Shown piece by piece: positions 10,447 to 63,262 of a stretch of 64,000 nt of DNA (within the stretch, counting starts at the first letter, position 1; every line of letters begins with the position of its first letter). The position numbers and the translations under genes are program-made. The DNA is taken from assembly GCA_002269645.1 (NCBI GenBank), contig NIVC01000374.1, positions 434,001 through 498,000 on the forward strand, read 5' to 3'. This stretch comes from Macrostomum lignano (Eukaryota). A model generated the notes under the pieces. It ran no database searches, had not been told where the DNA came from, and was given only the letters and a program-made list of their open reading frames with translations.

Positions 10447-12590
10447 TCACGAACTCGACCGCCTTCGTCGCCCAGCTCGACCAGCCGGCGCAGGCCGCCT
10501 GCCGCCTCCGGCGTTGTTGTGCCTGGGCGGCTCCGGGTTCACTAGCCTGGCCTGTAAACAAGTGCAGTGGGATTCTGCTAGCCAATGTGCTTTTAAATAG
10601 CAAAATTAACACTGGCTGGGGTGGCGGAGAAGCTGATTGGCTCTCAATGGGGGAGTGGCGGAGACGCTGATTGGCTCTCAATGGGGGAGTGGCGGAGACG
10701 CTGATTGGCTCTCAATGGGGGAGTGGCGGAGACGCTGATTGGCTCTCAATGGGGGAGTGGCTTTGACGCTGATTGGCTCTCAATGGGGGAGTGGCGGAGA
10801 CGCTGATTGGCTCTCAATGGGGTAGTGGCGGAGATGCTGATTGGCTCTCAATGGGGGAGTGGCGGAGACGCTGATTGGCTCTCAATGGGGGAGTGGCTTT
10901 GACGCTGATTGGCTCTCAATGGGGGAGTGGCGAAGACGCTGATTGGCTCTCAATGGGGGAGTGGCGGAGACGCTGATTGGCTCTCAATGGGGGAGTGGCG
11001 GAGACGCTGATTGGCTCTCAATGGGGGAGTGGCGGAGACGCTGATTGGCTCTCAATGGGGGAGTGGCTGAGACGCTGATTGGCTCTCAATGGGGGAGTGG
11101 CGGAGACGCTGATTGGCTCTGAATGGGGGAGTGGTTGAGACGCTGATTGGCTCACAATTTCACCAATTGGCTCAATGTGGGATTTGCTGAGATGCCAAGG
11201 ACTAAAACTATTATTACTCCAGCAATGCAGCTCAGCTGTCGATGGTGAAACAACTTATCCCAATGTAACTAAGCAAGGGGATCGGGATTGGCAACCGATG
11301 GGAAATTTGCAGGGAGATTAACAGTCATTCATATCCTCACCTGAATCTCCTGACCATCGATCTGCCCGCCGTCCATGTGCCGACAGGCGTCTGCCGCTTC
11401 GCCCGGCGATTCAAACTCAATGATGGCGAAGCCGCGAGTCAGCTCCGGGTGCTGCCGGTCGGCGGGGATGTCGATGCGGCGCAGTGCACCGTACATGCCG
11501 AATATCTCCTCAAGGTGGGCGCGGGCCACGTTGCGGGTGAGGCGGGTGACGCGGATCTGCAGAGAATTAAGCATTTTTGAGGCGATTTTAAGCATCTCTG
11601 AACTGGAGATAAGATTACAGAATCTCATCCCTGGATTGGTATGAGATCTCAGAATCTCATAGCTGAATTGGAGATGAGATCTCAGAATCTCTCACCCCTG
11701 AATTGGAGATGAGATCTCAGAATCTCTCATCCCTGAATTGGAGATGAGATCTCAGAATCTCTCATCCCTGAATTGGAGATGAGATCTCAGAATCTCTCAT
11801 CCCTGAATTGGAGATGAGATCTCAGAATCTCTCATCCCTGAATTGGAGATTAGATCTCAGAATCTCTCATCCCTGAATTGGAGATGAGATCTCAGAATCT
11901 CTCATCCCTGAATTGGAGATGAGATCTCAGAATCTCTCATCCCTGAATTGGAGATGAGATCTCAGAATCTCTCATCCCTGAATTGGAGATGAGATCTCAG
12001 AATCTCTCATCCCTGAATTGGAGATGAGATCTCAGAATCTCTCATCCCTGAATTGGAGATGAGATCTCAGAATCTCTCATCCCTGAATTGGAGATGAGAT
12101 CTCAGAATCTCTGCACACAAAAATATTTAACAAAGTCGTCGCCAACCTTTGCCGGCCTGCTCGGTGACGTGGACGACGCCCGACGTCGACGTCGATTGTT
12201 GGACGGCGAGGCCGCCGTAGACGAAGGCGAAGCGCCGCGAGACCGGCGGGATGAACTGCTGCTGCTGCTGCTGGACGATGAAGAATCCGAGGACGACGAA
12301 CCGGAAGAGGACGAGCGAGCGGAAGAAGCCGACGAGGACCTCGACTTGCTTTTGCTTTTACTTTTGTTGCTGCGCTTGTTCTTTGCCGAGGCCTTGCTCG
12401 AATCCTTTGAGGAAGCTGCGGACGATGAGGAGCGGCGACGCTTCGGCGAGGAAGCGCCAGACGAAGATGACCTGCTTCGGGCTCGGTGGCCGGCGCCGCC
12501 ACCGGTTCCGGTTAAGGCGGAATTGCCGGTAGTGGCATTTCCGGTTTTGGCATTGTTTGCAGCGGACGGGGCTACGGCTGCGTCCGGCAT
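10447..12590 (-). CDS. RNPS1: RNA-binding protein with serine-rich domain 1 (exon junction complex/ASAP component)
   Basis: Exons 12590-12147 (Ser-rich), 11556-11341 and 10551-10447. The RRM IRVTRLTRNVARAHLEEIFGMYG...RGFAIIEFE...HMDGGQIDGQEI matches the RNPS1 signature RLTRNV...HMDGGQIDGQEI. About 254 aa. Confidence 0.92.
10632..11160. repeat. 34-bp minisatellite GCTGATTGGCTCTCAATGGGGGAGTGGCGGAGAC
   Basis: About 15 copies in RNPS1 intron 2. Confidence 0.95.
11620..12111. repeat. 35-bp minisatellite CTCAGAATCTCTCATCCCTGAATTGGAGATGAGAT
   Basis: About 14 copies in RNPS1 intron 1. Confidence 0.95.
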
Positions 12591-12613
12591 TGGCTGAAGT
12601 AGATTGCGCGAGA

Positions 12614-13261
12614 TTCTTAGGGTGGGTTAGGGGCGATTCTTAGGGTGGGTTAGGGGCGATTCTTAGGGTGGGTTAGGGGCGATTCTTAGGGTGGGTTAGG
12701 GGCGATTCTTAGGGTGGGTTAGGGGCGATTCTTAGGGTGGGTTAGGGGCGATTCTTACGATGGGTTAGGGGCGATTCTTAGGCTGAGTTAGGAGCGATTC
12801 TTAGGGTGGGTTAGGAGCAATTCTTAGGGTGGTTTATGGGCGATTCTTAGGCTGGTTTAGGGGCGATTCTTAGGCTGGTTTAGGGGCGATTCTTAGGCTG
12901 GTTTAGGAGCGTTTCTTAGGCTGGTTTAGGAGCGTTTCTTAGGGTTGTTTAGGGGCGATTCTTAGGCTGGTTTAGGAGCGTTTCTTAGGGTTGTTTAGGG
13001 GCGATTTTTAGGCTGGTTTAGGAGCGATTCTTAGGCTAGTTTAGGGGAGATTTTTAGGCTGGTTTAGGGGCGATTCTTAGGCTGGGTTAGGAGCGATTCT
13101 TAGGGTGGTTAAGGGGCGATTCTTAGGCTGGTTTAGGAGCGATTCTTAGGCTAGTTTAGGAGAGATTCATAGGGTGGGTTAGGGGCGATTCATAGGCTGG
13201 TTTAGGGGCGATTCTTAGGGTGGATTAGGGGCGATTCTTAAGCTGGTTTAGGGGCGATTCT
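12614..13261. repeat. 23-bp TTAGGG-containing minisatellite GGGCGATTCTTAGGGTGGGTTAG
   Basis: About 28 copies immediately upstream of the RNPS1 start exon. Confidence 0.95.
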
Positions 13262-14187
13262 AAAAGTGGTATAGAATCCTGTTCTAAGAAAGCTAAGGAA
13301 AATATTTTTATTCATTCTATAGCTTTTTACAAAATGTTAAAGCGCAATAGCGAACACAAGAATCAGTGCGTATTTGTGAAAGAAAATAATAGTCCCCAAA
13401 CACAGCGGATGCAATAAAAATAAGCTAAATAAGCCTGTCGAGCAAATGCCTCAAACTTGTATTTCACGCTTTTACCGACTTTAATTATGCACTATAAGTA
13501 CGCGGAAAGCCTGAAATGCTTTATGAATGGATACAAAGTTTAGAAAAATTGTTATAAAAAATAAAAAACGATTTACTATAATAGAGGAGCGTTATAGAAG
13601 CGCTAAGCAAGATGAATGATTAGAAAATTAACTTACATAACTAAATACTTATTTATTGCTGTTAAAATGCGTCGAAAAGAAGAACTTAAAACTTTCAGCA
13701 CCGTAACATACTACTAACGGGCCTAAAACTGTATGGAGTTAAAGCGTTTTTTGTTTAATGCAAAAATTTTATGAAAAAATAGCGGTTATAATTATATAAA
13801 TGCCAATTGTATATACAAATACATTAGCCGATATAGTAACCTTATCAATGAGCACAACGGCAATTGGCGAAAGCGTAAATATGAGGAAAAAGCGGACCAA
13901 CGATTGCTAGAAGAGAGTAGTATATAAAGTGAAATGACGAAAAATTATGAAAAGCGCGTAGAAATTCGGATTAACTAATCACATTGCAACATTTAGTAGA
14001 GCAGAAATGATACCTTTATTAGAAGTGTTGCTTAAATAAGTCAGCATTATGTACGAATTATCATTGGTCCATTGGTGCAGTCGGTCACAATGCGGACTGT
14101 TATAAGTCCCTTGAGTAGTCAGCTGGAATGGGTGGAATGAAATATTGATTGTGGCTGCTGCAAGAATTTGAATAACATCTCATCATT

Positions 14188-14400
14188 CATCTATCTATCT
14201 ATGTATCTATCTATCTATGTATCTATCTATCTATCTATCTATCTATCTGTGTATCTATCATCTACCTACCTATCTATCTATCATCTACCTATACATCTAC
14301 CCATCTAACTATCTATCCATCATCTATCTATCTATGTATCTATCTATGTATCTATCTATCTATGTATCTATCTATCTATCTATCTATCTAAATATCTATG

Positions 14401-14438
<38 letters not shown>

Positions 14439-14488
14439 AATATCTATCTATCTATGTATCTATCTATCTATCTATCTATCTATCTAAA

Positions 14489-14531
<43 letters not shown>

Positions 14532-14590
14532 GTATCTATCTATCTATCTATCTATCTAAATATCTATCTATCTATCTATCTAGCTATCTA
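14188..14590. repeat. (TATC)n microsatellite
   Basis: Direct reading; starts just downstream of the SCAI stop. Confidence 0.95.
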
Positions 14591-14614
14591 TGAGCATGCA
14601 TTCCCCATCATTAA

Positions 14615-17600
14615 CTAACCAGCCTCGCAGAACAGATCCCTGGCGTCGAACAGCTCCGCCAAGTCCAGCACCTTGGCCTGCACAGAATCAACGTCAAGCA
14701 GGTCGTCGGGCAACGCCGGGTGAGCAGTCGGATAGCAGCGCGGCGGCTGGAAGTCGCGGTGCAGTCGCAGGGCCAGGCAACAGAACAAGAAGCGAAGCAG
14801 CAGGGCGCGCAGGAAATCGTCGCGGAAGAAACATTGATAGGCCGGGTCTGGTGGAGGATTGTATTATTTCAAATATAAAAGCCAATGCACAGAGTACGAG
14901 TGTGTGGCTAATGATGAGAGCACCTGTACGCAGTCACGCACTCATGCACACGCTCTCACAGGGTGTACAGGGGCCGTTTGACTTTCTAATCCTGTCAGGC
15001 ATGTGCACTCTCTGAGCTGCCCGCCGTACTCACCGACTTCCTTGTGTTGCAGCAGCAGGCGGCCAGCCTCAGACAGACAGCCGTCCATTAGGATGAGGCC
15101 GCGCTCCCAGGCTGGCAGCTGGACTGTATTGGCGCCGCACAGACGGGCCATGCCAGACAGTGGGCAGTGCAGGAACAGCGTGAACAGGCTGCCGCTCTGG
15201 CGACCGTCTGCGAATAAGGATAGGGTAAGGAGCTCGCTTGAAGTCTGCCTCACTGCCTGCTTCTGTGTGTCTTGATGCCCGTATTGGTGTCTGTATTGAT
15301 GCCTGTCTTGGTGCCTGTCCTAGTGTCTGTCTTGGTGCCTGTCCTAGTGTCTGTCTTGGTGCCTGTCCTAGTGTCTGTCTTGGTGCCTGTCCTAGTGTCT
15401 GTCTTGGTGCCTGTCCTAGTGTCTGTCTTGGTGCCTGTCCTAGTGTCTGTCTTGGTGCCTGTCCTAGTGTCTGCCCTAGTGTCTGTCTTGGTGTCTGTCT
15501 TAGTGCCTGTCCTAATGTCTGTCTTAGTGCCTGTCCTAGTGCCTGCCCTAGTGTCTGTCTTGGTGTCTGTCTTGGTGCCTGTCCTAGTGTCTGTCTTAGT
15601 GCCTGTCTTGGTGCCTGTCTTGCTGCCTGTCCTAGTGTCTGTCTTGGTGCCTGTCCTAGTGTCTGTCTTGGTGCCTGTCCTAGTGTCTGTCTTAGTGCCT
15701 GTCCTAATGTCTGTCTTAGTGCCTGTCCTAGTGCCTGTCATAGTGTCTGTCTTAGTGCCTGTCCTAGTGTCTGTCTTAGTGTCTGTCTTAGTGTCTGTCT
15801 TGGTGCCTGTCCTAGTGTCTATAATCATGCAGCAGTCTTACCGGGACACACAGAACTAGGAATCTGTTCAGGAGACATCAGACAAACTAGCGGCTCGTTG
15901 AATAGATTTGGAAACTTCTGAAAAAGAATACATTATAGAAAACTATTAAGGTCTATCGTGTGCATATTGTACATTTAAATAAACTTGGGATAACTGTTAC
16001 TCTTACTCACCTTAAAAGCCGTACTGTTATCAGAATCCACAATGAGAAACACCGGCTTACGAGTGAAGCAGTACATATCGCCAGGATAGAAGCTGTGGAA
16101 TAATAGACAATATTGCCCGTATTACATAGTAGAAAAAAATATAAGCTGTTTCATGGCAAGACAATGCAAATGCAGTCAGTCTATGGTCAGACAATGCAGT
16201 CTATGGTCAGAGAATGCAGTCTATGGTCAGACAATACAGTTTATCGTCAGACAATGAATGCAGTCTATGGCCAGAAAATGCAGTCTGTGGTCAGAAAATG
16301 AATGCAGTCTATGGCCAGACAATGCAGTCTATAGTCAGACAATGAATGCAGTCTATGGCCAGACAATGCAGTCTATGGTCAGACAATGAATGCAGTCTAT
16401 GGCCAGACAATGCAGTCTATGGTCAGACAATGCAGTCTATGGTCAGACAATGCAGCCTATGGTCAGACAATGCAGTCTATGGTCAGACAATGAATGCAGT
16501 CTATGGTCAGACAATGCAGTCTATGGTCAGACAATGCAGTCTATGGCCAGACAATGCAGTCTATGGTCAGACAATGAATGCAGTCTATGGTCAGACAATG
16601 CAGTCTATGGTCAGACAATTCAGTCTATGGTCAGACAATGAATGCAGTCTATGGTCAGACAATGAATGCAGCCTATGGTCAGACAATGAATACAGTCTAT
16701 GGTCAGACAATGAATGCAGTCTATGGTCAGACAATGAATGCAGTCTATGGTCAGACAATGCAGTCTATGGCCAGACAATGCAGTCTATGGTCAGACAATG
16801 CAGTCTATGGTCAGACAATGCAGTCTATGGCCAGACAATGCAGTCTATGGTCAGACAATGCAGTCTATGGTCAGACAATGCAGTCTATGGCCAGACAATG
16901 CAGTCTATGGTCAGACAATGAATGCAGCCTATGGCCAGACAATGCAGTCTATGGTCAGACAATGAATGCAGCCTATGGCCAGACAATGCAGTCTATGGCC
17001 AGACAATGCAGTCTATGGTCAGACAATGAATGCAGTCTATGGTCAGACAATGCAGTCTATGGTCAGACAATGCAGTCTATGGCCAGACAATGCAGTCTAT
17101 GGCCAGACAATGAATGCAGTCTATGGTCAGACAATGCAGTCTATGGTCAGACAATGCAGTCTATGGCCAGACAATGCAGTCTATGGCCAGACAATGCAGT
17201 CTATGGTCAGACAATGCAGTCTGTGGTAAATCAATACTACTGAAGAGTGAATTAATGGTATGCAAGAGTGAAGTGTCTATGGCAAAAGCAATCCTGAGAA
17301 GAAAGGCAATTTCTATGTGAAGCAACAGCCAGAAAAAACATGAGCACATACACACAGGCACGCATTTATAGACACGCTCACACAGGGTGTACAAGTGTAC
17401 ACAGGATGGTCCTTATGGCTTGTGAATCGCGAGCCAACAACCTCCTCCCAATTCACGAAATATGCAGCACTCACCACCTGCTGTCTCTGATGACGCCGCC
17501 ACTGCCAGGCAGTCTGCGAGTCTCCGGCTTGCCGGGTTTGTCCGATTCGCGGCTCCTTTGAACTGCCAGACCGCCGTCTCTGTAGCCGCTGTAGGCTGCA

Positions 17601-20600
17601 AGTGGCAGAGTTGGCTGCACCATAAATAATATCAAACTGTATCAAACTGGCGCATGCACACAGTGTGAAGGGGAAGAGAGCGAGAGAGACCAGCAGTAGC
17701 TGTGCAAAATAAATACATGATTTATGAATTGGAATCAGGTTTCAAACAGTTTTTAGCCAACTTTTTAGAGTTGAAAATTTATTACTAACAATGCTGCCCG
17801 GTAACAATAGCCTTAACGTAGAAAAGTGGGAAATATTCGAATGTTCCCCTAAAAATCCATGTTTTACAGAATCAAAAAGTAAACATTTTCCATGAACCCA
17901 CAATTACTTGATAAACATATTAATAAACGCACGTTTTCTATCGATAGACAGATCCATAAACTCGCATTCCCTATCAATAAACAGATCGATAAACTCGTAT
18001 TCCCTATCAATAAACAGATCCATAAACTCGCATTCCCAATATATAAACATATCCATAAACTCGCATTCCCTATCAATAAACAGATCTATAAACTCGCATT
18101 CCCTATATAAAAATAGATCTATAAACTAACATTCCCTATATGTAAACAGATCTATAAGTACTCGCATTCCCTATATATAAATAGATCTATAAACTAACAT
18201 TCCCTATATATAAACAGATCGATAAACTCGCATTCCCTATATATAAATAGATCTATAAACTCATGTTTAATATTGATAAACAGATACTTAGTAAAAATGC
18301 TTTAATGGATTGCATTTTCCCCTAAAATTAAACAAATAAATTAATATAAACAATTAAACATTAAATTAACTCACAGTCCTCCTTCTTGCCGCGCTGCTGG
18401 CACCGTCTGCCGTCGGCGCTAAAGTACACCAGCACCACTCCGTCATCTGGTAAATCGTTAAATGTCGAATTCAACGAGAAGACAATCTCGGCCAGGCTCG
18501 GCCGGTACAGGAGGTACTTGTGCGGATTCTGCGACTCCGATAAGCCGCCGTCCGGACTCTGGGCACCCTGCAATGCGGGGTGAGGTCTCCCAGATGCCTC
18601 AATCCCCTAAGACATTTTCCCACTTTCTCAATTCCCTCAAACATTCTTCCCACTTTCTCAATCCCCTCGGACATTCTTCCCACTGCCTCAATCCCCTCGG
18701 ACACTCTTCCCATTGCCTCAATCCCCTCGGACATTCTTCCCACTGCCTCAATCCCCTCGGACATTCTTCCCACTGCCTCAATCCCCTCGGACACTCTTCC
18801 CATTGCCTCAATCCCCTCGGACATTCTTCCCACTGCCTCAATCCCCTCGGACATTCTTCCCACTGCCTCAATCCCCTCGGAAATTCTTCCCATTGCCTCA
18901 ATCCCCTCGGACATTCTTCCCACTACCTCAATCCCCTCGGACATTCTTCCCACTGCCTCAATCCCCTCGGACATTCTTCCCACTGCCTCAATCCCCTCGG
19001 ACATTCTTCCCACTGCCTCAATCCCCTCGGACACTCTTCCCATTGCCTCAATCCCCTCGGAAATTCTTCCCATTGCCTCAATCCCCTCGGACATTCTTCC
19101 CACTGCCTCAATCCCCTCGGAAATTCTTCCCATTGCCTCAATCCCCTCGGACATTCTTCCCACTACCTCAATCCCCTCGGACATTCTTCCCACTGCCTCA
19201 ATCCCCTCGGACATTCTTCCCACTGCCTCAATCCCCTCGGACATTCTTCCCACTGCCTCAATCCCCTCGGACATTCTTTCCACTGCCTCAATCCCCTCGG
19301 ACATTCTTCCCACTGCCTCAATCCTCTCGGACATTCTTCCCACTTTCTCAATCCCCTCGGACATTCTTCCCACTTTCTCAATCCCCTCGGACATTCTTCC
19401 CACTGCCTCAATCCTCTCGGACATTCTTCCCACTTTCTCAATCCCCTCGGACATTCTTTCCACTGCCTCAATCCTCTCGGACATTCTTCCCACTTTCTCA
19501 ATCCCCTCGGACATTCTTCCCACTGCCTCAATCCCCTCGGACATTCTTCAAACTGCCTCAATCCCCTCGGACACTCTTCCCATTGCCTCAATCCCCTCGG
19601 AAATTCTTCCCATTGCCTCAATCCCCTCGGACATTCTTCCCACTGCCTCAATCCCCTCGGAAATTCTTCCCATTGCCTCAATCCCCTCGGACATTCTTCC
19701 CACTACCTCAATCCCCTCGGACATTCTTCCCACTGCCTCAATCCCCTCGGACATTTTTCCCACTGCCTCAATCCCTCGGACATTCTTCCCACTGCCTCAA
19801 TCCCCTCGGACATTCTTTCCACTGCCTCAATCCCCTCGGACATTCTTCCCACTGCCTCAATCCTCTCGGACATTCTTCCCACTTTCTCAATCCCCTCGGA
19901 CATTCTTCCCACTTTCTCAATCCCCTCGGACATTCTTCCCACTGCCTCAATCCCCTCGGACATTCTTCCCACTGCCTCAATCCCCTCGGACATTCTTTCC
20001 ACTGCCTCAATCCTCTCGGAAATTCTTCCCACTTTCTCAATCCCCTCGGACATTCTTCCCACTTTTTCAATTCCCTCGGACACTCTTCCCACTTTCGCAA
20101 TCCCCTCGGACATCCTTCCCACTTTCTCAAATGCCGGTCTCGCACCTGTCTGGACCCCGGATTGTCGCCCAGTCCAGCCGGGCCACCGCCAGCACCAGCG
20201 GCCACAGGCGGTTGCTTCTCTAACGCCAGGGACATTCTCAGCATGTCAACTGACAGCTCGCTGAACTTGGCCTGATCAGCGCAGCCGCCAACAATCAAAG
20301 CGTCGGCCAGACGAAGCGGCAGCTGTGTCGTCCCGCCGGTCGGGGCGCGCAGAGCCGGAAAGTCAGTCAGCGGCGGGCTGGTCTCCGGCGATAGGCGCCG
20401 CTTTAAAAACAGCTGCCTTCCATCCGAGTCCAGCAGGCTGAGAGGCTGGGCGGCTCGCAGCATCGAGCGGATTTCGTCGGCCACTCGGAACCACCAGGCG
20501 GCGTCGAACGGCTGATAGGTGGCCTCGTAGTCGGCGATATCGCGGCTGAGGTCCTGCATCAGTTCGGCGGCCAGCTTGCCGTTTTCAAGCACCAGGCAGA

Positions 20601-50516: not shown

Positions 50517-50699
50517 TTTTCTTCAGCAGTCGTTGAATTAATAAACGGTTTTTAACACTACAAAACTAATCAAGAGGCATACTAATGACTGAATGCGAAG
50601 ACGGTGCTGTCTGAAAAAGGTAAAATCGCAAATAGTGCTAATAGTTAGGTCAGTTAAATCCAACTTACCTCCTAGTAAGTAAGAATAGATAAGAGGAAA

Positions 50700-51620: not shown

Positions 51621-52367
51621 GAGAAGGTGGAGAAAATGGAAGACAGAGACGAGAAGCGAAAATAGAAAATGAGAGGATAGAATAGAGAATAATGTCTAAA
51701 AGCTATGAAATATCTCTAAACTATTCAACCTGTGTACAAAGAAATAAATAGATTAAAACAATTTGGTATAAATAATTTTTTGGTTATTTTAAAAGTACGC
51801 ATTTTACAACTGATAGCGCTACAATTGTACCTATACAAAATTTCAATGATAAAGTTATAACCTAAAATGTAGAAATGATTCCACTATAAAAAGTGATTTG
51901 GCTAGCTAAATTAACACAGTAGAGAGAAGTTTAAGATCGGAACCTGCCGAACAAAAAATACACCTTAGTTTTAAAGCAATTAGTCTTTGTTCGAATGTAC
52001 ATTATACACAAAAACGTGCATAGCAATAAAGTTAGTTTTAATACGATTTACGAAAATCATTTTTTGATAAAGATATATTTTAGCCGCTTCTTCCTCTGGA
52101 AAAGGAACAAAAGAAGAAATTATGGAATGTTCGGACGGAAAATTGCAGTAAAGTGAATCGAAACGGTGACCAATATGCAGGCTCTTAAGAGTAAAGTCCG
52201 CATTTTTGTCTAATTGAAAGCTGCTTGTTAGGCAGCAAAGACGTCAAAATAGACCTGCATTTGACCTGAGCAACAACTGGCTGCTGAAGAATATACTTGT
52301 TAGAGTCGCAGTTCTGTAAAACTGTGTTTAAATGAACTTATTTGTTAAACACCTCGGAAAAAAAGAT

Positions 52368-53125
52368 TTCTGGGAGGCTGGCCCAGCAACTGAGGATCTG
52401 GGAGGCTGGGAGGCTGGCCCAGCAACTGAGGATCTGGGAGGCTGGCACAGCAACTGACACTCTGGGAGGCTGGCCCTGCAACTGAGGATCTGGGAGGCTG
52501 GCCCAGCAACTAAGGATCTTGGAGGCTGGCCCAGCAACTAAGGATCTGGGAGGCTGGCCCAGCAACTGAGGATCTGGGAGGCTGGATCAGCAACTGAGGA
52601 TCTGGGAAGCTGGCCCAGCAACTAAGGATCTGGGAGGCTGGCCCAGCAACTGAGGATCTGGGAAGCTGGCCCAGCAACTGAGGATCTGGGAGGCTGGGAG
52701 GCTGGCCCAGCAACTGAGGATCTGGGAGGCTGGCCCAGCAACTGAGGATCTGGGAGGCTGGCCCAGCAACTGAGGATCTGGGAGGCTGGCCCAGCAACTG
52801 ACACTCTGGGAGGCTGGCCCTGCAACTGAGGATCTGGGAGGCTGGCCCTGCAACTGAGGATCTGGGAGGCTGGATCAGCAACTGAGGATCTGGGAAGCTG
52901 GCCCAGCAACTAAGGATCTGGGAGGCTGGCACAGCAACTGAGGATCTGGGAGGCTGGCCCAGCAACTAAGGATCTGGGAGGCTGGCACAGCAACTGAGGA
53001 TCTGGGAGGCTGGCCCAGCAACTAAGGATCTGGGAGGCTGGCCTTGCAACTAAGGATCTGGGAGGCTGGCTCAGCAACTGAGGATCTGGGAAGCTGGCTC
53101 AGCAACTGAGGATCTGTGTGGCTGG
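52368..53125. repeat. 27-bp minisatellite CAGCAACTGAGGATCTGGGAGGCTGGC (family locus 3)
   Basis: About 28 copies just downstream of the SCLT1 stop. Confidence 0.95.
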
Positions 53126-53196
53126 CCAGCATATACAGTTTAAAGTTAGATCTTTAAGCCAAATACAGAACTAAAGTTAATACCGTCGCAGCCATA

Positions 53197-56100: not shown

Positions 56101-58787
56101 ACACACAGACAGGCGGACAGACACATCAGACAGGCGGACAGACTGAGACAGACACATCCAGACAGGCGGTCAGACTGGGACAGACACATACAGACAGGCG
56201 GACAGACTGAGACAGGCACACAGACAGGCGGTCAGACTGAGACAGGCACACAGACAGGTGGACAGACTGAGACAGACACATACAGACAGGCGGTCCCACT
56301 GAGACAGGCACACACAGACAGGCGGACAGACACATCAGACAGGCGGACAGACTGAGACAGACACATCCAGACAGGCGGTCAGACTGGGACAGAAACATAC
56401 AGACAGGCGGACAGACTGAGACAGGCACACAGACAGGTGGTCAGACTGAGACAGGCACACAGACAGGTGGACAGACTGAGACAGACACATACAGACAGGC
56501 GGTCAGACTGGGACAGGCACACAGACAGGCGGTCAGACTGAGACAGGCACACAGACAGGTGGACAGACTGAGACAGACACATACAGACAGGCGGTCAGAC
56601 TGGGACAGACACATACAGACAGGCGGACAGACTGAGACAGGCAGACACAGACAGGCGGTCAGATTGGGACAGACACACACAGACAGGTGGACAGGCTCAA
56701 ACAGAACACGCGGAGCCAGCCGACGAGTGCCCCTACTTGCTCAGCCGCCTGAGCGGCAGCCTCTTCGGCCTCCTGCAGCCGCTCCTGCAGCTCCAGCACG
56801 CGAGTCTCCAGCGAGCGCCTCTCAGCGCCGGCCCGCTCCTGGGCAGCCGCCAGGCGCTGCTCGGCGTCCGCTAGCGACTCGCGGAGTCGACGAATCTCTC
56901 CGCCGCCGACAGCACCGTTTGTAGCCGCGCTGGCAGATTCGGCAAGCTGTTCGCGAAGCTGACGGCAGGTTCGACTGGCCTGCAATTGCGAATAAGTGGT
57001 GAAAAAAGATTATTTTTTATTGCCTATTAACTCCATTACATCCTCATTACAGCGGTCCAGACCTTCTAAACGTCTAGCATACACACTCTGTGCTTTACTA
57101 ATTATCCCTCATGGAATTCCCTTTAGGCAAATCGTTCTTTGTCCACAAGCCCTAGATTTCTGCTAGTGGAATTTCCATGGAATTTCCACGGAATTCCCAC
57201 GCGCGGAATCGAGTCCGTGATCTTCGGCACGAGAGACAGACGTCTTGGTCTAGATATGACCTAGGCCAAGAGGCGTCCCATAGTCGCTGCAGGTAACACA
57301 GGTAAAATAAGAAAGAAGTAACTCTAGACGACTCTAGAACGGCTCTAAACGACGAGATTTCACGGTCTCAAAAATGTCGTCAAAGAGTCGCCCAAGAGTC
57401 GTATCTCTAAGGCATGCCAGAGTCGCTGTAGAATCACTGAGTTGCGTCTACGAGTAAAGCGCATCTGCGTCACTCAATGAATTAGAATCGCATTTCGCTT
57501 CTATAACAACTTTATTTAGTCTACTTGAGTTAGTAGGAAGTTAAGCGCTAACACACGGCTTTTAGACGACTTTTTCGCGACTGTTACGATTCTGCAGCTC
57601 ACGTGATGCATTCGTGACCCAACAGTCGCCTCTCCGTCACGTTGCAGTCGTTTTGAGTCGTTAAAATGTGTCACAAGAGCCGCCCCAGAGTCGCTAGAGT
57701 CACTACTGAATAAAAACATTTCACCTGAGCAGCTTCATCCCGACTGGCAGCCAGTTCGGAGCGCAGCCTGGCAACTTCGGCTTCGAGTTCGCCAACAACA
57801 GCGGCGTGAGACTCGACAGCTCGCTCCAGGCCGGTGCCGTTGCGCAAGGCTGCCACCTCGTCCGCGAGGCGTTCGAGCTCGGCTGAGGCCAGCCTGAGAG
57901 GCACAGTTGGGAAGAGTTTGGAGTTCATGAGGCGATTTTTAATGAAGTCATAGAGATGAGGTCAATGAGGTCAATGAGGTCAATGATCAATGAAGCCATC
58001 TGGTCAATGATCAATGAAGTCAATGAGGTCAATGATCAATGAAGCCAATAGTCAATGATCAATGAGGTCAATGATCAATGAAGCCATCTGGTCAATGATC
58101 AATGAAGTCAATAAGGTCAATGATCAATGAAGTCAATAAGGTCAATGATCAATGAAGCCATCTGGTCAATGATCAATGAAGTCAATGAGGTCAATGATCA
58201 ATGAAGTCAATAAGGTCAATGATCAATGAAGTCAATGAGGTCAATGATCAATGAAGTCAATAGTCAATTATCAATGGGGCCAATGATCAACGAGATCAAT
58301 GAGGTCAATGAGGCCATAGACCCAAATTCTAACGAGGTCATAGACTTATGTTGTTAATGAGGTCATAAACCCATATTATCAATTAGGTCATTACACAATG
58401 ACCCTACACTCACCTGTACAACTGCTGGCTCTGCTCCTTCTCTAGCAGAGCCTGAGCTAGTTGAGCATGCAGATTCTCCTCAACCTCGGATCTGTCAGCT
58501 AGCACCTGTCCATCAGCCGTTAGCTCTTCCAATGCCCGCCGCAGTTCAACAACTTTAGACCGTTCGCGTTCGTACTCAGCCAGTAGGGCCTCGTATTCGG
58601 TCAACAGCGGCGGCATGACTTGCCGGTGCTTGCGCAACAGCAGCTGGCTATCGCCGTCCAACGATTCGAAATAGTCGGCCATCTGTTCCATATTTTGGCG
58701 CCTGGCCAGCGCGGCATTTAATCGGCGAATCTCATCGTGGAGCTGCTGCTCCGTTGCGGCTCCGGCGCCACCGCCTCGTTCAGCCAT
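53197..58787 (-). CDS. SCLT1: Sodium channel and clathrin linker 1 (centriolar distal appendage coiled-coil protein); 6 exons
   Basis: Exons 58787-58414, 57893-57725, 56979-56737, 55837-55739, 54658-54174 and 53686 (or 53713)-53197, about 620 aa of coiled coil. Recalled SCLT1-like segments: PPLLTEYE, NLHAQL..A..EKEQ, LVDDAGARTREEV...IESLTEQL...ERAVKEKRLAEAEL, RNLLAGQQRLAQRWKDE. Confidence 0.75.
53755..54112. repeat. 36-bp minisatellite AATATGTCAGTGAATGTGTCGCTAAACAAGTCGCTC
   Basis: About 10 copies in SCLT1 intron 5. Confidence 0.9.
54775..55550. repeat. 18/21-bp minisatellite TTGAGGATCTTATTGGGC / TTGAGGATCTTATGGGAAGC
   Basis: SCLT1 intron 4. Confidence 0.92.
55900..56695. repeat. GACA-derived ~30-36-bp minisatellite CAGACAGGCGGTCAGACTGAGACAGGCACA
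   Basis: SCLT1 intron 3. Confidence 0.92.
57955..58310. repeat. TCAATGA-based repeat
   Basis: SCLT1 intron 1. Confidence 0.9.
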
Positions 58788-58909
58788 GCAATAAAGTGTT
58801 TTTAAAATGAGTTTGTGATGAATGCACTGCTGAATGCGCGGCTTTGGGACTGATTGTAAACTTAATTACGAGCGCATATAGTCACACAAACTGGTGCCCG
58901 ATGACACCA

Positions 58910-59146
58910 GTAGGACACTAGGACAGACAGACAGACACTAGGACAGACAGACAGACAGACACTAGGACACTAAGACACACAGACAGACACTAGGACACTA
59001 AGACAGACAGACAGACACTAGGACACTAAGACAGACAGACAGATACTAGGACACTAAGACAGACAGACACTAGGACACTAAGACAGACAGACAGACAGAC
59101 AGGCAGGCAGACAGACAGGCAGGCAGACAGACGGACAGACAGAAAA

Positions 59147-59179
<33 letters not shown>

Positions 59180-59275
59180 AAAACAGACAGACAGACAGAC
59201 AGAAAAACAGACAGACAGACAGACAGACAGAAAGAAAGACAGATACAGAGACACTAAGACAGGCAGACGGAAGCA
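58910..59275. repeat. GACA-based compound repeat
   Basis: VDAC-SCLT1 spacer. Confidence 0.88.
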
Positions 59276-60061
59276 TCAATCAAAAGACAGACAATGGTGG
59301 CCACATAAGTCCATACAGGCAGGTCAGTTATTTCTAAAGCAACACTGCTTAGACTACTATAACACATACAACCTATGCTCAAACGTGATATAGTAAATAA
59401 AATAAAATAACTCAAACTGAAAACTGAAAACAGTTACGGTTCTCTTGGTGTTAATTTATACTTCGGCCAATAGCAAAGAGGTGTTCATACTGTTTCCAAA
59501 TATTTTAATTCGCCAATAAAAAGCTTGTTATCAGTTGCTACGACCCAAGCATGGCAATTACCTTTCCCGCTACACTTTATAGTAAGCTATTAAGTATTAC
59601 GTAGGGTTAAAATGAACAGACAAAAAATGGGAGCCTAAAGATCAGTACGAGATGCAGCGAGACACAGTAGAGTGTAAAGAATAAATCCCCTAGTAAAAAA
59701 TCGGTTAATTATACTACTTATTACTTTGCATTTAACTTACTATAGTAGTAAATAATGAGGCTAAATGTGCAGCAATAAGATGTTAGATAGGAATATATAA
59801 TAATCTAGGAAAATAACAGAACATAAGATGCGTACGAAGAGTAAAAGGGATTTTTATATAACTTACTAAGTTAGAAAACTAAACATAAGCTAGTATGAGA
59901 GGGTTAACTTGCACACGCGTACTTTTGTTTTACTTTGTTAATCCAGTTTTGTTTATTAAGTAAGGGCGCCAATTTCGATTTAAACTAATTTCTGTTTTCA
60001 TTTCTTGCTAATTGAGTAGTTCTCAGACCAAAGAAACTTTATGGATTATTATTCATATTAG

Positions 60062-63000
60062 TTAAGAATCGAAGCTGAGCGCCAGACCAAGACGGTGGCC
60101 GCCGCCGTTAATGTTCTTGCCGTCAAAGTTGCCGCACAGAGTGACGCGAACGCCGTCGTTAACCTTGAAGCTGTAGGCCGAACCAATCATGCTGTTGTTG
60201 TCAACCTGTGGGGTGCATGCGGGTAGCATATAGGCACCGCTTCTGAGGCTTTTGTAGGGAAGCGGTTCTCAGACTATCGCAAGCTGCATCCAACATAACA
60301 CTCCACAGTTCTCTAATAACATCTTTTTAAATCACCCAGTACGGCTATGGACCCAGGTGTTTATCCCCCTGAATTCCCCAATCGATCTTCCTGAATTCCC
60401 CAATCTATCTCCCTGAATTCCCCAATCTGTCTCCCTGAAGCCCCCAATCTATCTTCCTGAACCCCCCAATCTATCTTCCTGAAGCCCCCAATCTATCTCC
60501 CTGAACCCCCCACCCAATCTATCCCCTGAAGCCCCCAATCTATCTCCCTGAAGCCCCCAATCTATCTCCCTGAAGCCCCCAATCTATCTCCCTGAAGCCC
60601 CCAATCTATCTCCCTGAAGCCCCCAATCTATCTCCCTGAAGCCCCCAATCTATCTTCCTGAAGCCCCCAATCTATCTCCCTGAACCCCCCACCCAATCTA
60701 TCCCCCTGAAGCCCCCAATCTATCTCCCTGAAGCCCCCAATCTATCTCCCTGAAGCCCCCAATCTATCTTCCTGAAGCCCCCAATCTATCTCCCTGAAGC
60801 CCCCAATCTATCTCCCTGAACCCCCACCCAATCTATCCCCTGAAGCCCCCAATCTATCTCCCTGAAACCCCCAATCTATCTTCCTGAAGCCCCAAATCTA
60901 TCTTCCTGAACCCCCCAATCTATCTCCCTGAAGCCCCCAATCTATCTCCCTGAAGCCCCCAATCTATGTCCCTGAAGCCCCCAATCTATCTCCCTGAAGC
61001 CCCCAATCTATCTTCCTGAACCCCCCAATCTATCTCCCTGAACCCCCCACCCAATCTATCCCCCTGAAGCCCCAAATCTATCTCCCTGAAGCCCCCAATC
61101 TATCTCCTTGAACCCCCCACCCAATCTATCCCCCTGAAGCCCCAAATCTATCTTCCTGAAGCCCCCAATCTATCTCCCTGAAGCCCCCAATCTATCTCCC
61201 TGAACCCCCCACCCAATCTATCCCCTGAAGCCCCCAATCTATCTCCCTGAAGCCCCCAATCTATCTCCCTGAAGCCCCAATCTATCTTCCTGAAGCCCCC
61301 AATCTATCTCCCTGAAGCCCCCAATCTATCTCCCTGAACCCCCCACCCAATCTATCCCCCTGAAGCCCCCAATCTATCTCCCTGAAACCCCCAATCTATC
61401 TTCCTGAAGCCCCAAATCTATCTTCCTGAACCCCCCAATCTATCTCCCTGAAGCCCCCAATCTATCTCCCTGAAGCCCCCAATCTATGTCCCTGAAGCCC
61501 CCAATCTATCTCCCTGAAGCCCCCAATCTATCTTCCTGAACCCCCAATCTATCTCCCTGAACCCCCCACCCAATCTATCCCCCTGAAGCCCCAAATCTAT
61601 CTCCCTGAAGCCCCCAATCTATCTCCTTGAACCCCCCACCCAATCTATCCCCCTGAAGCCCCAAATCTATCTCCCTGAAGCCCCAAATCTATCTTCCTGA
61701 AGCCCCAAATCTATCTTCCTGAACCCCCCAATCTATTTTCCTGAACCCCCCAATGTATCTTCCTGAACCCCCCAATCTATCTTCCTGAAGCCATTAGTCT
61801 ATCCCCCTGAAGCCCCCATTATATCCCTTTAAGTCCCTAATCTACCCTACTGAAGCCCTTAGCCAATTCCCTGAAGCCATCAGTCTATCTCCCAGATTTC
61901 GCAAGCTTTAACCCTTCCAAGTCTCTCATCTCCCTAGAAATCTAAACCCCTATAGGAAAAAGTTGTAAAACCGCGGACGGTGTCCGGCGCACTTTTGAAA
62001 TTTTTCTAAAGCGCAGCGCGCGCACAGGCGCAGCGCCTGCGCGCGCTGCCCTTTCTTACTGGCTGCTGCTCTAGCAAATACATATACATGGAAATGGGTA
62101 TAATACCTCTGTTGAAGGGGCTTATACACTCGTAATTTATTAAGCTTAGAGATGTTCCGAAAATTCAATTTCAATTTTCCAAAATTTGAAATTTTTTAGA
62201 GCGAATTTCAATTTCGAAATAAAATTTAGAAGTGAAAATTTTGGTAGTGTCTAAAAAGTCGCTAAAAATAAACTACTTTCTACTACATATACATGTATTA
62301 CTTTTTGCTTAAGCAGTAAATTGAAAGTAAAAAAGTGAGTGTTGATCATACTAAACTTTGTTTTTCTGAATTATGATTTCGGGAAATTTCAATTTTGATT
62401 TTGGAAAGTTAGCGAATTTTGATTTCGACGAAACTGCAGATCTTTCGGAACATCTCTAATAATCCTAAAGCGCGGTAAAATAGTTTGACTCTTTTCTAAA
62501 GCGCGCGTCCGCGGGTTTTTAACATTTATTCCAATAGGGATCTAAACCAAATCGAACCTTGAACTTGAAGAAGCTATCGCCCTCCAGCTTATACTTGGTG
62601 GCCACGCCAAAATCCGTAGCGTGACTGCTAGACGACCAGCCGAGTTTAACGCCAGTCTCCAACGATTCCGACAGTTTCTGGTAGACAGAGCCAGAAAAGT
62701 TGGTGCCATTCTCAACTCCGGCATAGAGACAGAAATCCTTAAGCTTATAGGCGACGCCATAGTTAAGCTTAGTAAGCTTCTGTCGCTCCGTGTCGTAGCC
62801 GACATTGACGCCGCCGAAGAAGTTCTGATAGCCGAACACGCCGCTACCAACCAGGGTTGGCAAGTTAGATTTGAACTCCAGGTCCAAGCCTAGATTAGCG
62901 TTGGAAGATTTGAATCCATTCTTCACCTTGGCGCTCTTCTTGCCAGTATTAGGCTCGAAATTGGCCTCGAGAGAATTCTTCAGACCCTTCACTAGCTTGT

Positions 63001-63262
63001 CCTCGATGGCCACCTCGGCGGTTACAACATTGCTAGTCTTCCACTTCTCAGTGAATGTGATTCCGTAGTCTTTGAACACGTATTTAGTCTCCAGGTCGCC
63101 GGCGGCACGACCAGTTTCCATATCGTGATTGCCGGTGGTTTTAAGTTCTACACCGGTTGAAGTCTTGGACTTGATCTCCGCTTTGACAGACCCAAATGTG
63201 TAGTCCCGGCTGAACAGGTCCGAGGCATCCTTGCCAAGATCGCCAAAGCTTGGTGGGGCCAT
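60062..63262 (-). CDS. VDAC: Voltage-dependent anion channel (mitochondrial porin); 2 exons
   Basis: Exons 63262-62558 and 60205-60062, 282 aa. It starts MAPPSFGDLGKDASDLFSRDY, contains ITFTEKWKT, and ends KVDNNSMIG..Y...GVRVTL...DGKNINGGGHRLGLAL. Confidence 0.96.
60360..61850. repeat. 22-bp minisatellite CCCCAATCTATCTCCCTGAAGC with higher-order duplication
   Basis: About 65 copies in the VDAC intron. Confidence 0.96.
61948..62539. mobile_element. Outer TIR element enclosing the hAT-like MITE (nested insertion)
   Basis: Imperfect ~32-34-bp inverted ends CCCTATAGGAAAAAGTTGTAAAACCGCGGACG / CGTCCGCGGGTTTTTAACATTTATTCCAATAGGG. Internal GC palindrome at 62013-62049. Confidence 0.55.
62147..62458. 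mobile_element. hAT-like MITE in the VDAC intron
   Basis: Perfect 16-bp TIR TAGAGATGTTCCGAAA / TTTCGGAACATCTCTA, an Ac-like TAG(A/G)GATG terminus. The interior is AT-rich. 8-bp flanks ATTAAGCT / ATAATCCT (5/8). Confidence 0.7.

What the first reader, a model, noticed from the sequence alone, without database searches (positions are those of the whole stretch)
10447..63262. Eight co-oriented housekeeping genes with near-uniform spacers: candidate SL trans-spliced operon
Seen: VDAC, SCLT1, POLR3A, SH3BP5, PCTP, MTRF1L, SCAI and RNPS1 are consecutive on the minus strand across 53 kb. Stop-to-ATG gaps are about 1.27, 2.68, 1.29, 3.02, 1.15, 1.03 and 2.02 kb. After removing tandem arrays, all seven fall to roughly 0.8-1.3 kb of AT-rich, sense-U-rich DNA. 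Six of the eight starts lie 1-16 nt behind an acceptor-like AG with no obvious partner donor: tagacATG, ctcag|ttgtctATG, aaccag|..ATG, ttttcatag|ccaacgATG, gactttag|cATG, cttcag|ccaATG. Known: flatworms including Macrostomum use SL trans-splicing and have polycistronic units enriched in conserved genes. Inference: this is one long operon or two adjacent ones. Four members are mitochondria-associated in mammals (VDAC, SH3BP5/Sab, release factor, PCTP).
Basis: partly seen in the sequence, partly recalled or inferred. Interest (0 to 1): 0.7.

Follow-up and report, generated by a model that had tools for sequence, protein, structure and literature searches.

The report
Known flatworm trans-spliced gene cluster
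Eight same-direction housekeeping genes of the flatworm Macrostomum lignano, several of which demonstrably receive the spliced leader and four of which the published annotation already joins into one transcriptional unit; this is an ordinary example of that worm's known operons, not a new kind of system.

Summary
The window is Macrostomum lignano Mlig_3_7, scaffold NIVC01000374.1, bases 434,001-498,000. The eight co-oriented genes, the seven stop-to-ATG gaps and their collapse to 0.77-1.3 kb after removing tandem arrays are all real. The "AG 1-16 nt before the ATG" signal is not. 70% of all ATGs on that strand have one, and the real acceptors of VDAC (-79) and SH3BP5 (-132) lie elsewhere.

Trans-splicing itself is well supported. 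The assembly was polished with RNA-seq. In some of the three near-identical copies of this region, the spliced-leader (SL) tail was written into the reference just upstream of the VDAC, SCLT1-like and SH3BP5 acceptors. VDAC mRNAs of two related worms carry the SL.

GenBank locus tags place POLR3A, SH3BP5, PCTP and MTRF1L in one transcriptional unit, Mlig012706 (g1, g2, g4, g5). VDAC and the SCLT1-like gene have separate units. The tags for SCAI and RNPS1 could not be retrieved.

The central four genes are therefore an already annotated polycistronic unit. A single eight-gene operon is possible but unshown, at about 0.2. M. lignano operons of up to nine genes with repeat-inflated spacers are already published, so interest is low.

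The parts
60062..63343 (-). VDAC gene. Trans-splice acceptor AG at 63343-63342. Exon 1 is 63341-62558 (ATG 63262). The intron 62557-60206 is filled by a 22-bp array. Exon 2 is 60205-60062.
   Evidence: The spliced 282-aa product equals PAA84447 / BOX15_Mlig009193 and matches Porin_3. For the acceptor, copy L009 reads ..cttATTGCATG|CTTTGGCAGC where the window reads ..cttctcttcag|CTTTGGCAGC. Related-species mRNAs carry the SL tail plus a 77-78 nt UTR.
58785..58795 (-). SL 3' tail (TTTATTGCATG) sitting in the reference directly before the first SCLT1-like codon. It marks the trans-splice site at 58785|58784. It is probably written in by RNA-seq polishing, and it creates a genomic 'ATG'.
   Evidence: 11/11 match to the SL tail. 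The three copies read tttattgcATG (window), ttttctgcATG (L009) and ttttcatcAAG (L010) before GCTGAACG. Pilon was run with RNA-seq.
53197..58787 (-). SCLT1-like coiled-coil gene with 6 coding exons: 58787-58414, 57893-57725, 56979-56737, 55837-55739, 54658-54174 and 53686-53197.
   Evidence: The model minus its first two residues is exactly PAA84446, BOX15_Mlig004135g1, 5'-partial. No Pfam or PDB family was found.
39892..50612 (-). POLR3A (RPC1). ATG at 50516, stop ends at 39892. Predicted acceptor tttacctttttcag| with AG at 50612-50611.
   Evidence: P0001 = PAA84445, BOX15_Mlig012706g1. RPC1 match at 1477 bits. The acceptor is only a consensus match.
36588..38731 (-). SH3BP5. Acceptor AG at 38731-38730, exon starts at 38729, ATG at 38597, intron 38132-37569, stop ends at 36588.
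   Evidence: The 481-aa model equals PAA84444, BOX15_Mlig012706g2. For the acceptor, the window reads aatccgctttccag|TCAAATCG and L011 reads aatttgcttgcatg|TCAAATCG. All 5 changes are towards the SL.
31951..33588 (-). PCTP-like START gene. Exons 33565-33371, 33027-32715 and 32117-31951 (224 aa). Likely acceptor cattccag| with the exon starting at 33588.
   Evidence: START domain. The model agrees with the N-terminal 207 residues of A0A1I8II69. The GenBank model PAA84443, BOX15_Mlig012706g4, is 5'-partial and truncated. The copy L011 CDS begins 2 nt after that acceptor.
26881..30809 (-). Mitochondrial RF1-type release factor (MTRF1L-like). Acceptor ttttcatag| with the exon starting at 30809. 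ATG at 30803. Introns 30312-29715, 29527-29428, 29247-28190 and 27973-27181.
   Evidence: The model minus 'ML' equals PAA84442, BOX15_Mlig012706g5, 5'-partial. PCRF + RF-1 domains. The fusion model A0A1I8II69 joins ..SMMQKA to PTMLKAAT.., i.e. it splices onto this acceptor.
14615..25851 (-). SCAI. ATG at 25850, about 9 coding exons, last exon 14847-14615. An AG lies 1 nt before the ATG (tttag| here, ttcag| in the two other copies).
   Evidence: GenBank calls a 585-aa SCAI starting at 25850. My 579-aa model matches Pfam SCAI end to end. SCAI homologues were found. The acceptor is not tested.
10447..12593 (-). RNPS1. Consensus acceptor ctacttcag| with the exon starting at 12593. ATG at 12590. 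Introns 12146-11557 and 11340-10552. Stop ends at 10447.
   Evidence: Model of 254 aa. Its RRM is closest to human RNPS1, 4a8x, E=2e-26. It was not found as such in the protein collection. The acceptor is not tested.
58788..60061 (-). VDAC to SCLT1-like spacer: 1274 nt, 916 nt without the GACA-type array at 58911-59268.
   Evidence: It is about 99% identical among the three copies except for array length and the SL-tail cluster.
50517..53196 (-). SCLT1-like to POLR3A spacer: 2680 nt, 998 nt without the arrays at 52369-53131 and 50700-51618.
38598..39891 (-). POLR3A to SH3BP5 spacer: 1294 nt, 766 nt without the array at 39141-39668. It lies inside annotated unit Mlig012706.
33566..36587 (-). 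SH3BP5 to PCTP spacer: 3022 nt, 1315 nt without three arrays. It lies inside unit Mlig012706. The missing tag g3 presumably lies here.
   Evidence: The placement of g3 is an inference from the numbering g2 / g4.
30804..31950 (-). PCTP to MTRF1L spacer: 1147 nt with no arrays. It lies inside unit Mlig012706 and is bridged by an older chimeric gene model.
25851..26880 (-). MTRF1L to SCAI spacer: 1030 nt with no arrays.
12591..14614 (-). SCAI to RNPS1 spacer: 2024 nt, 971 nt without the arrays at 14189-14591 and 12612-13261.

Best explanation
This is a run of eight conserved, co-oriented, SL-trans-spliced genes of Macrostomum lignano. Its central part, POLR3A > SH3BP5 > PCTP > MTRF1L (window about 50.6 to 26.9 kb), is transcribed as one polycistronic precursor. 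That precursor is resolved by 3'-end cleavage and polyadenylation of each upstream gene, and by addition of the 35-nt spliced leader at an acceptor 6-132 nt before each downstream start codon. VDAC and the SCLT1-like gene upstream are also trans-spliced. For the SCLT1-like gene the leader's own AUG is the start codon. Both genes are most likely separate transcription units, or at least were never assembled with their neighbours. SCAI and RNPS1 downstream are unresolved. The kilobase spacers are 3'UTR plus short intercistronic sequence, inflated by neutral minisatellite arrays.

Shown: gene identities, orientation and spacing; trans-splicing of VDAC, the SCLT1-like gene and SH3BP5; and shared transcriptional-unit tags for the four central genes.

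Inferred: co-transcription from one promoter; the acceptors of POLR3A, SCAI and RNPS1; and all poly(A) sites.
For: (1) Organism and scaffold are identified exactly.

(2) Locus tags are Mlig012706 g1 (POLR3A), g2 (SH3BP5), g4 (PCTP) and g5 (MTRF1L) on this scaffold, in transcription order. The authors' rule is that TU 'MligNNNNNN.1' contains genes MligNNNNNN.g1, g2 and so on, cut at SL and poly(A) signals. Unrelated genes can share a prefix only through an assembled unit that spans them.

(3) On scaffold NIVC01000630.1 SH3BP5, PCTP and MTRF1L are again one unit, Mlig029240 g1-g3.

(4) There are SL-tail footprints at three acceptors. They comprise 19 substitutions between copies that are otherwise about 99% identical. 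All lie within 14 nt upstream of an acceptor, and all change towards the SL base. The assembly was polished with RNA-seq.

(5) VDAC mRNAs from two related worms (88% and 91% identical protein) start with ..TGCGAAGACTCAATTTATTGCATG plus a 77-78 nt UTR. This matches the window acceptor at -79.

(6) The GenBank CDSs of the SCLT1-like gene, PCTP and MTRF1L are 5'-partial and begin within a few nt of the start codon. That is expected if the mRNA 5' ends were set by SL-read peaks.

(7) The older model A0A1I8II69 fuses PCTP to MTRF1L through the acceptor catag|CCAACGATG. Such chimeras are treated as signatures of polycistronic pre-mRNA in flatworms (PMC12582326).

(8) Seven of the eight genes have a YTNCAG consensus acceptor within 160 nt upstream. 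The background chance per gene is 0.30-0.34, giving P about 0.001-0.003.

(9) All seven spacers are T>A on the sense strand. No opposite-strand gene, tRNA or Rfam RNA lies inside the run.
Against: - No RNA read was seen directly for this locus in M. lignano. The transcriptional unit is known only through locus tags.
- StringTie/TACO units can merge same-strand neighbours through read-through or multi-mapping among three 99%-identical copies. On the two other scaffolds POLR3A is a unit of its own (g6, g7).
- Stop-to-acceptor distances of 634-1292 nt after repeat removal are far above the roughly 100-bp mode of operonic distances (PMC8629364). They fit that mode only if the 3'UTRs are 0.5-1.2 kb, and no poly(A) site is known.
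- Promoters inside the spacers cannot be excluded with these tools.
Confidence: 0.6

Rival explanations
1. All eight genes, VDAC to RNPS1 (53 kb), are one operon transcribed from a single promoter upstream of VDAC. The separate unit names only reflect RNA-seq assemblies breaking in repeat-rich spacers.
For: Every spacer has the same build and the same sense-strand T bias. All seven stop-to-acceptor distances are at most 1292 nt after repeat removal. They would therefore pass the published rule of less than 1 kb between transcripts if the 3'UTRs are at least about 300 nt. VDAC 3'UTRs of 740-910 nt in related species would leave about 0-180 nt before the SCLT1-like acceptor. The authors themselves warn that units split in repeat-rich intergenic regions. 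Operons of up to nine genes are reported.
Against: VDAC and the SCLT1-like gene are single-gene units in all three copies. Arrays of similar size were nevertheless bridged between POLR3A, SH3BP5 and PCTP in this copy. The numbering g1-g5 then g6/g7 elsewhere implies that SCAI was not in unit Mlig012706. An abundant porin sharing a promoter with a centriolar-type coiled-coil gene is not what expression levels would suggest (general knowledge, not tested).
Confidence: 0.2
2. There is no true polycistron. Each gene has its own promoter in the spacer upstream and its own outron, and is trans-spliced as a monocistronic pre-mRNA. Unit Mlig012706 is a read-through or assembly merge, and co-orientation is a legacy of synteny or chance.
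For: About 60% of trans-spliced M. lignano genes are not in operons. Residual spacers of 0.77-1.3 kb leave room for promoters. The authors found that up to 2 kb upstream is enough for correct expression of other genes. POLR3A is separated from SH3BP5 in two of the three copies. A chimeric PCTP-MTRF1L model could be an ab initio artefact.
Against: Two independent unit assemblies join SH3BP5, PCTP and MTRF1L (Mlig012706 and Mlig029240). Eight of eight genes co-oriented has a chance of 1/128 under random orientation. The sense-strand T bias runs across whole spacers. The downstream genes are trans-spliced, as operon resolution requires.
Confidence: 0.2

Closest known systems
Macrostomum lignano transcriptional units / operons (Wudarski et al. 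2017, PMC5730564; Ustyantsev & Berezikov 2021, PMC8629364)
   Same: It is the same species and the same single 35-nt SL ending in AUG. The genes are conserved 'housekeeping' genes, co-oriented neighbours, with repeats inflating the intergenic distances. The YTNCAG acceptor motif is present. The units are cut into g1, g2 and so on. Four of the genes here carry such tags.
   Different: Nothing differs in kind. If all eight genes were one unit, it would sit at the top of the reported size range (maximum nine genes). The stop-to-acceptor distances are long, so membership by the 1-kb rule depends on unknown poly(A) sites.
Caenorhabditis elegans SL2-type operons
   Same: Co-oriented unrelated genes are made from one promoter. 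The precursor is resolved by 3'-end formation coupled to trans-splicing. Such operons are enriched in basic cellular and mitochondrial functions.
   Different: C. elegans uses a dedicated SL2 for downstream genes, with about 100-nt intercistronic regions. M. lignano has one SL, and here there are kilobase, satellite-filled spacers.
Polycistrons of parasitic flatworms recognised through chimeric gene models (PMC12582326)
   Same: A chimeric model (A0A1I8II69, PCTP fused to MTRF1L) uses the downstream gene's SL acceptor. That paper notes intergenic distances of up to several kb in such cases. The SL 3'-terminal AUG is used as initiator (Cheng et al. 2006, cited there), as inferred for the SCLT1-like gene.
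   Different: This is a free-living macrostomid. The 300-bp operon threshold used for the parasites would not be met.
Trypanosomatid polycistronic transcription units
   Same: They are long runs of co-oriented, functionally unrelated genes, all trans-spliced.
   Different: There, essentially every gene is in such a unit, tens to hundreds of genes long, and the genes lack cis-introns. Here the genes are intron-rich, and only about 15% of genes are in operons.

Membership tests
M. lignano SL operon (operational definition of PMC8629364) | Adjacent genes have the same orientation and are not interrupted by an opposite-strand transcript. | tested here: met
   GenBank calls only same-strand genes from VDAC to SCAI. 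Plus-strand ORFs in the run are antisense shadows or have no Pfam hit. No tRNA or Rfam RNA is present.
M. lignano SL operon (operational definition of PMC8629364) | The downstream gene of each pair is SL trans-spliced. | tested here: inconclusive
   Met for the SCLT1-like gene and SH3BP5 through SL-tail footprints. Indirectly supported for PCTP and MTRF1L by 5'-partial CDSs at the start codon and by a chimeric model using the acceptor. For POLR3A, SCAI and RNPS1 there are only consensus acceptors.
M. lignano SL operon (operational definition of PMC8629364) | The repeat-adjusted distance between the end of the upstream transcript and the start of the downstream transcript is below 1 kb. | tested here: inconclusive
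   Upper bounds (stop codon to acceptor, arrays removed) are 919, 904, 634, 1292, 1141, 1029 and 968 nt. True distances are shorter by the 3'UTR length. That length is unknown here, and is 740-910 nt for VDAC in related species.
M. lignano SL operon (operational definition of PMC8629364) | The genes are assembled within one transcriptional unit (precursor RNA) in Mlig_RNA_3_7. | tested here: inconclusive
   Met for POLR3A, SH3BP5, PCTP and MTRF1L, which share the prefix Mlig012706 (naming rule). Not met for VDAC (Mlig009193) or the SCLT1-like gene (Mlig004135). The tags of SCAI and RNPS1 were not retrievable.
Operon in the strict sense | A single promoter, with no internal transcription start sites. 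| not testable with these tools
   This needs RAMPAGE/CAGE, chromatin marks or reporter assays. The only promoter scanner on hand is for bacterial sigma-70.
C. elegans-type operon | A specialised downstream leader (SL2) and about 100-nt intercistronic regions. | tested here: not met
   M. lignano has a single SL (PMC8629364). The SL tails seen at the first gene (VDAC) and at downstream genes are the same sequence. The spacers are 1.0-3.0 kb.

The most novel reading that the evidence does not exclude
The whole 53-kb run, VDAC to RNPS1, is a single primary transcript. That would make it an eight-gene operon whose intercistronic regions have been expanded to kilobases by minisatellites. It would be among the largest flatworm operons, and it would show that operon processing tolerates kb-scale repeat insertions between the poly(A) site and the trans-splice site.
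Probability: 0.2. Interest if true: 0.4.

Novelty: already known. Interest (0 to 1): 0.2.

Why it matters
It matters little as a discovery. SL operons, their enrichment in conserved genes, sizes up to nine genes and repeat-inflated spacers are all published for M. lignano. The core of this locus is already a multi-gene unit in the public annotation.

Two practical points are useful:
- Proximity of an AG to an ATG is worthless as a trans-splicing predictor in this genome.
- The Mlig_3_7 reference carries SL-derived bases at trans-splice acceptors, probably from RNA-seq polishing. These can erase real acceptors and create false genomic start codons, as at the SCLT1-like gene. Conversely, they give a sequence-only marker of trans-splice sites when paralogous copies are compared.

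Tried and rejected
- Two chimeric protein queries, meant to fetch all eight M. lignano proteins at once, failed.
- The third search, with SCAI, found SCAI homologues but not the locus's own protein.
Ids from the listing of cluster members were accepted instead.
- Brute-force exon-chain enumeration timed out or gave many false models. Anchor-guided models with the GenBank product lengths worked for SH3BP5, the SCLT1-like gene and MTRF1L.
- The 585-aa GenBank SCAI and any RNPS1 product could not be reproduced exactly. The best SCAI model has 579 aa, and 9 guesses failed. Their unit tags therefore remain unknown.
- Phylogenetic footprinting of the spacers is powerless, because the three copies are about 99% identical.
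- 3'UTRs of the related species do not align to the window.
- AATAAA/ATTAAA hits are too few and ambiguous to place poly(A) sites.
- Loose SL-tail matches (up to 2 mismatches) occur at the chance rate of about 6 per strand. Only sites that differ between copies were counted.
- An 8-nt SL-tail match at 34490 is present in all copies and was treated as chance.
- No paper text mentions the unit ids. PMC8629364 has no held supplement listing operons.
- The idea that the arrays sit specifically just before the acceptors (18-126 nt in 4 of 7 spacers) was dropped. Arrays cover 43% of the window, so this is not significant.

Full report
**Where the window comes from.** One exon of the POLR3A gene matched a GenBank protein of Macrostomum lignano. 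The DNA around that protein, 30,625 bases of GCA_002269645.1 scaffold NIVC01000374.1, is identical to the reverse complement of window 60516-29892. From the record ranges, the window is bases 434,001-498,000 of that 600,066-bp scaffold of assembly Mlig_3_7. Two further scaffolds, NIVC01000630.1 (loci L009, L011) and NIVC01000725.1 (loci L010, L012), carry near-identical copies of the same gene run in the same order. This fits the known partial genome duplication of the sequenced line (PMC8629364).

**The observation: what holds.** All eight genes are real and lie on the minus strand.
- GenBank calls VDAC, a 617-aa coiled-coil protein, POLR3A, SH3BP5, a truncated PCTP model, an RF1-type release factor and SCAI. 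No opposite-strand gene lies between them.
- Pfam and PDB searches confirm Porin_3, RPC1 (7a6h_A, 1477 bits, clearly above Pol II and Pol I), SH3BP5, START, PCRF+RF-1 and SCAI. The RRM is closest to RNPS1 (4a8x, E=2e-26).
- The 'SCLT1' name could not be checked. The protein has no Pfam or PDB hit. A remembered N-terminal resemblance is only a lead.
- I rebuilt exon models. Those for VDAC, SH3BP5, the SCLT1-like gene and MTRF1L reproduce the GenBank proteins residue for residue.
- Stop-to-ATG gaps are 1274, 2680, 1294, 3022, 1147, 1030 and 2024 nt.
- Without tandem arrays the gaps are 916, 998, 766, 1315, 1147, 1030 and 971 nt. They are 64-71% A+T, with sense-strand T above A in all seven.
- Arrays make up 43% of the whole window and a similar share of the introns. 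They are a property of the genome, not of the spacers.

**The observation: what does not hold.** The 'acceptor-like AG 1-16 nt before the ATG' is at chance level. Of 817 ATGs on that strand, 70% have one, so six of eight is what chance gives. For two genes the listed site is also not the one used (see below).

**Direct traces of trans-splicing.** The published SL is CGGTCTCTTACTGCGAAGACTCAATTTATTGCATG (PMC8629364). Directly before the first SCLT1-like codon, window 58795-58785 reads TTTATTGCATG, the last 11 SL bases. The two other copies are about 99% identical over the whole spacer, but here they read ttttctgcATG and ttttcatcAAG. The last version is an ordinary pyrimidine-rich AG acceptor with no genomic ATG.

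The same pattern occurs at two more places.
- Copy L009 reads cttATTGCATG|CTTTGGCAGC where the window reads cttctcttcag|CTTTGGCAGC, 79 nt before the VDAC ATG.
- Copy L011 reads aatttgcttgcatg|TCAAATCG where the window reads aatccgctttccag|TCAAATCG, 132 nt before the SH3BP5 ATG.

Across these sites, 19 substitutions all lie within 14 nt upstream of an acceptor, and all change the base to the SL base. Loose SL-tail matches elsewhere occur at the chance rate. The assembly paper states that the Canu assembly was polished with Pilon using Illumina shotgun data and RNA-seq mapped by STAR (PMC5730564). The simplest reading is that SL-bearing reads overwrote the bases before the acceptor. These are therefore artefacts, but they record where the SL is joined:
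- VDAC at 63343-63342 | 63341.
- The SCLT1-like gene at 58785 | 58784.
- SH3BP5 at 38731-38730 | 38729.

For the SCLT1-like gene, the native copy has no ATG and the SL ends in AUG in frame with GCT GAA CGA. The leader therefore supplies the start codon, a use known from other flatworms (Cheng et al. 2006, cited in PMC12582326).

**Independent support for VDAC.** Logan assemblies of RNA-seq runs hold VDAC mRNAs that are 88% and 91% identical in protein to the window's VDAC. These presumably come from other Macrostomum species. All five contigs begin with ..TGCGAAGACTCAATTTATTGCATG followed by a 77-78 nt UTR. One UTR starts cttgcaaagcatcctc, against ctttggcagcaatctc in the window. Their 3'UTRs are at least 740-910 nt.

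**Is it an operon?** I could not see M. lignano RNA reads, but the public annotation encodes the answer for part of the run. In that annotation, assembled precursor transcripts are 'transcriptional units'. Units at least 95% identical share a prefix, and the mRNAs cut from a unit at SL and poly(A) signals are numbered g1, g2 and so on (PMC5730564). [quoted passage not shown]

Exact look-ups gave these tags on this scaffold:

| Gene | Tag |
|---|---|
| VDAC | Mlig009193 |
| SCLT1-like | Mlig004135g1 |
| POLR3A | Mlig012706g1 |
| SH3BP5 | Mlig012706g2 |
| PCTP | Mlig012706g4 |
| MTRF1L | Mlig012706g5 |

- Four unrelated neighbouring genes numbered in transcription order under one prefix means that an assembled unit spanned them.
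- The missing g3 probably lies in the 3-kb SH3BP5-PCTP spacer. It was probably dropped from GenBank as non-coding or repeat-overlapping. This is an inference.
- On NIVC01000630.1, SH3BP5, PCTP and MTRF1L again form one unit (Mlig029240 g1-g3), while POLR3A stands alone (g6).
- VDAC and the SCLT1-like gene are single-gene units in all three copies.
- The GenBank CDSs of the SCLT1-like gene, PCTP and MTRF1L are flagged partial. They begin within a few nucleotides of the start codon. This is what one expects if the mRNA 5' ends were set from SL-read peaks next to the ATG.
- An older UniProt model (A0A1I8II69, 664 aa) fuses PCTP (..SMMQKA) to PTMLKAAT.. of MTRF1L. It splices a donor in the last PCTP exon onto ttttcatag|CCAACGATG. 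A recent survey of flatworms treats such chimeras as signatures of polycistronic pre-mRNA, even with spacers of several kb (PMC12582326).

**How the spacers fit.** The published criterion for M. lignano operons has three parts. The neighbours are co-oriented, the downstream gene is trans-spliced, and the repeat-adjusted distance between transcripts is under 1 kb. The mode of that distance is near 100 bp, and the largest operons hold nine genes (PMC8629364). Using the supported or best consensus acceptors, stop-to-acceptor distances without arrays are 919, 904, 634, 1292, 1141, 1029 and 968 nt. These still include the upstream 3'UTRs. With UTRs like those of VDAC in related species, the VDAC to SCLT1-like distance would be about 0-180 nt. 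All seven junctions could therefore pass the rule, but no poly(A) site is known to me, so this stays open. Seven of the eight genes have a YTNCAG consensus acceptor within 160 nt upstream. The background chance is 0.30-0.34 per gene, giving P about 0.001-0.003.

**Verdict on mechanism.**
- Most likely (0.6): the central four genes are made as one precursor and resolved by polyadenylation plus SL addition. The flanking genes are trans-spliced but belong to other, or unresolved, units.
- A single eight-gene operon (0.2) is not excluded. The authors themselves say that units break in repeat-rich intergenic DNA.
- Independent promoters in every spacer, with the annotated unit being a read-through merge (0.2), is also not excluded. 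POLR3A is separate in two of the three copies, and the residual spacers leave room for promoters.

**Edges of the run.** Upstream of VDAC, starting about 575 nt before its ATG and on the opposite strand, lies a frameshifted reverse-transcriptase fragment (RVT_1). It is at window 63837 onwards and at L010 5405-6640. Downstream of RNPS1, in window 1-10,400, several ORFs on both strands gave no Pfam match. I could not tell what the next gene is.

**Novelty.** The kind of system, its enrichment in conserved genes, the role of repeats in the spacers and the size range are all published for this species. The core of this very locus is a multi-gene unit in GenBank. The 'mitochondrial' theme rests on mammalian localisations of SH3BP5 and PCTP and was not testable. 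I rate the finding as already known and of low interest. The SL-tail artefacts in the reference are the only thing here I had not expected.

Noticed in passing
window 58785-58795 (-); L009 6689-6698 and 9995-10000; L011 1616-1629: The last 6-14 bases of the spliced leader are written into the reference assembly just upstream of three trans-splice acceptors. This occurs in some but not all of three copies that are otherwise about 99% identical. All 19 differences change towards the SL base. The most likely cause is Pilon polishing with RNA-seq. In the window it erases the SCLT1-like acceptor and creates a false genomic ATG. A real cDNA-mediated conversion is not excluded (my estimate is under 0.15).
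   Followed up: partly
window 58784 (-), L010 9995-10001: In the apparently unpolished copy the SCLT1-like reading frame has no genomic start codon at its 5' end (..catcAAG|GCTGAACGA). The SL's terminal AUG is in frame and abuts the first codon, so the leader probably donates the initiator methionine.
   Followed up: partly
window 63837-64000 (+); L010 5405-6640 (-): A frameshifted reverse-transcriptase (Pfam RVT_1) fragment of a retroelement lies on the opposite strand. It starts about 500 nt upstream of the VDAC trans-splice acceptor and bounds the co-oriented run on that side.
   Followed up: partly
window 33081-33358, 44664-45340, 52369-53131: The same 28-bp minisatellite (TGGCTCAGCAACTGAGGATCTGGGTGGC-like) occurs three times: in a PCTP intron, in a POLR3A intron and in the SCLT1-like to POLR3A spacer. 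Overall 43% of the window is tandem arrays with periods of 4-46 bp. Array lengths differ between the three genomic copies.
   Followed up: partly
window 32717-33571 (-): The GenBank PCTP model PAA84443 (104 aa) ends in a frameshifted tail (..EVVRWTGRH). A 224-aa START-domain model (exons 33565-33371, 33027-32715, 32117-31951) agrees with the PCTP part of UniProt A0A1I8II69 and matches Pfam START.
   Followed up: yes
window 33566-36587 (-): The locus tags jump from Mlig012706g2 (SH3BP5) to g4 (PCTP). An unreleased 'g3' transcript, probably non-coding or repeat-overlapping, presumably lies in this 3-kb spacer. No convincing ORF was seen there.
   Followed up: no
window 25851-25855 (-) vs L011 14482-14486, L012 14562-14566: The AG 1 nt before the SCAI ATG is preceded by gacttT in the window but by gacttC in both other copies. 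The latter gives the consensus CTTCAG.
   Followed up: no
window 1-10400: Several non-repetitive ORFs of 80-145 aa lie on both strands (e.g. 6325-6699 +, 8644-9054 +, 581-955 -) and have no Pfam match. The gene that follows RNPS1, and its orientation, were not resolved.
   Followed up: partly
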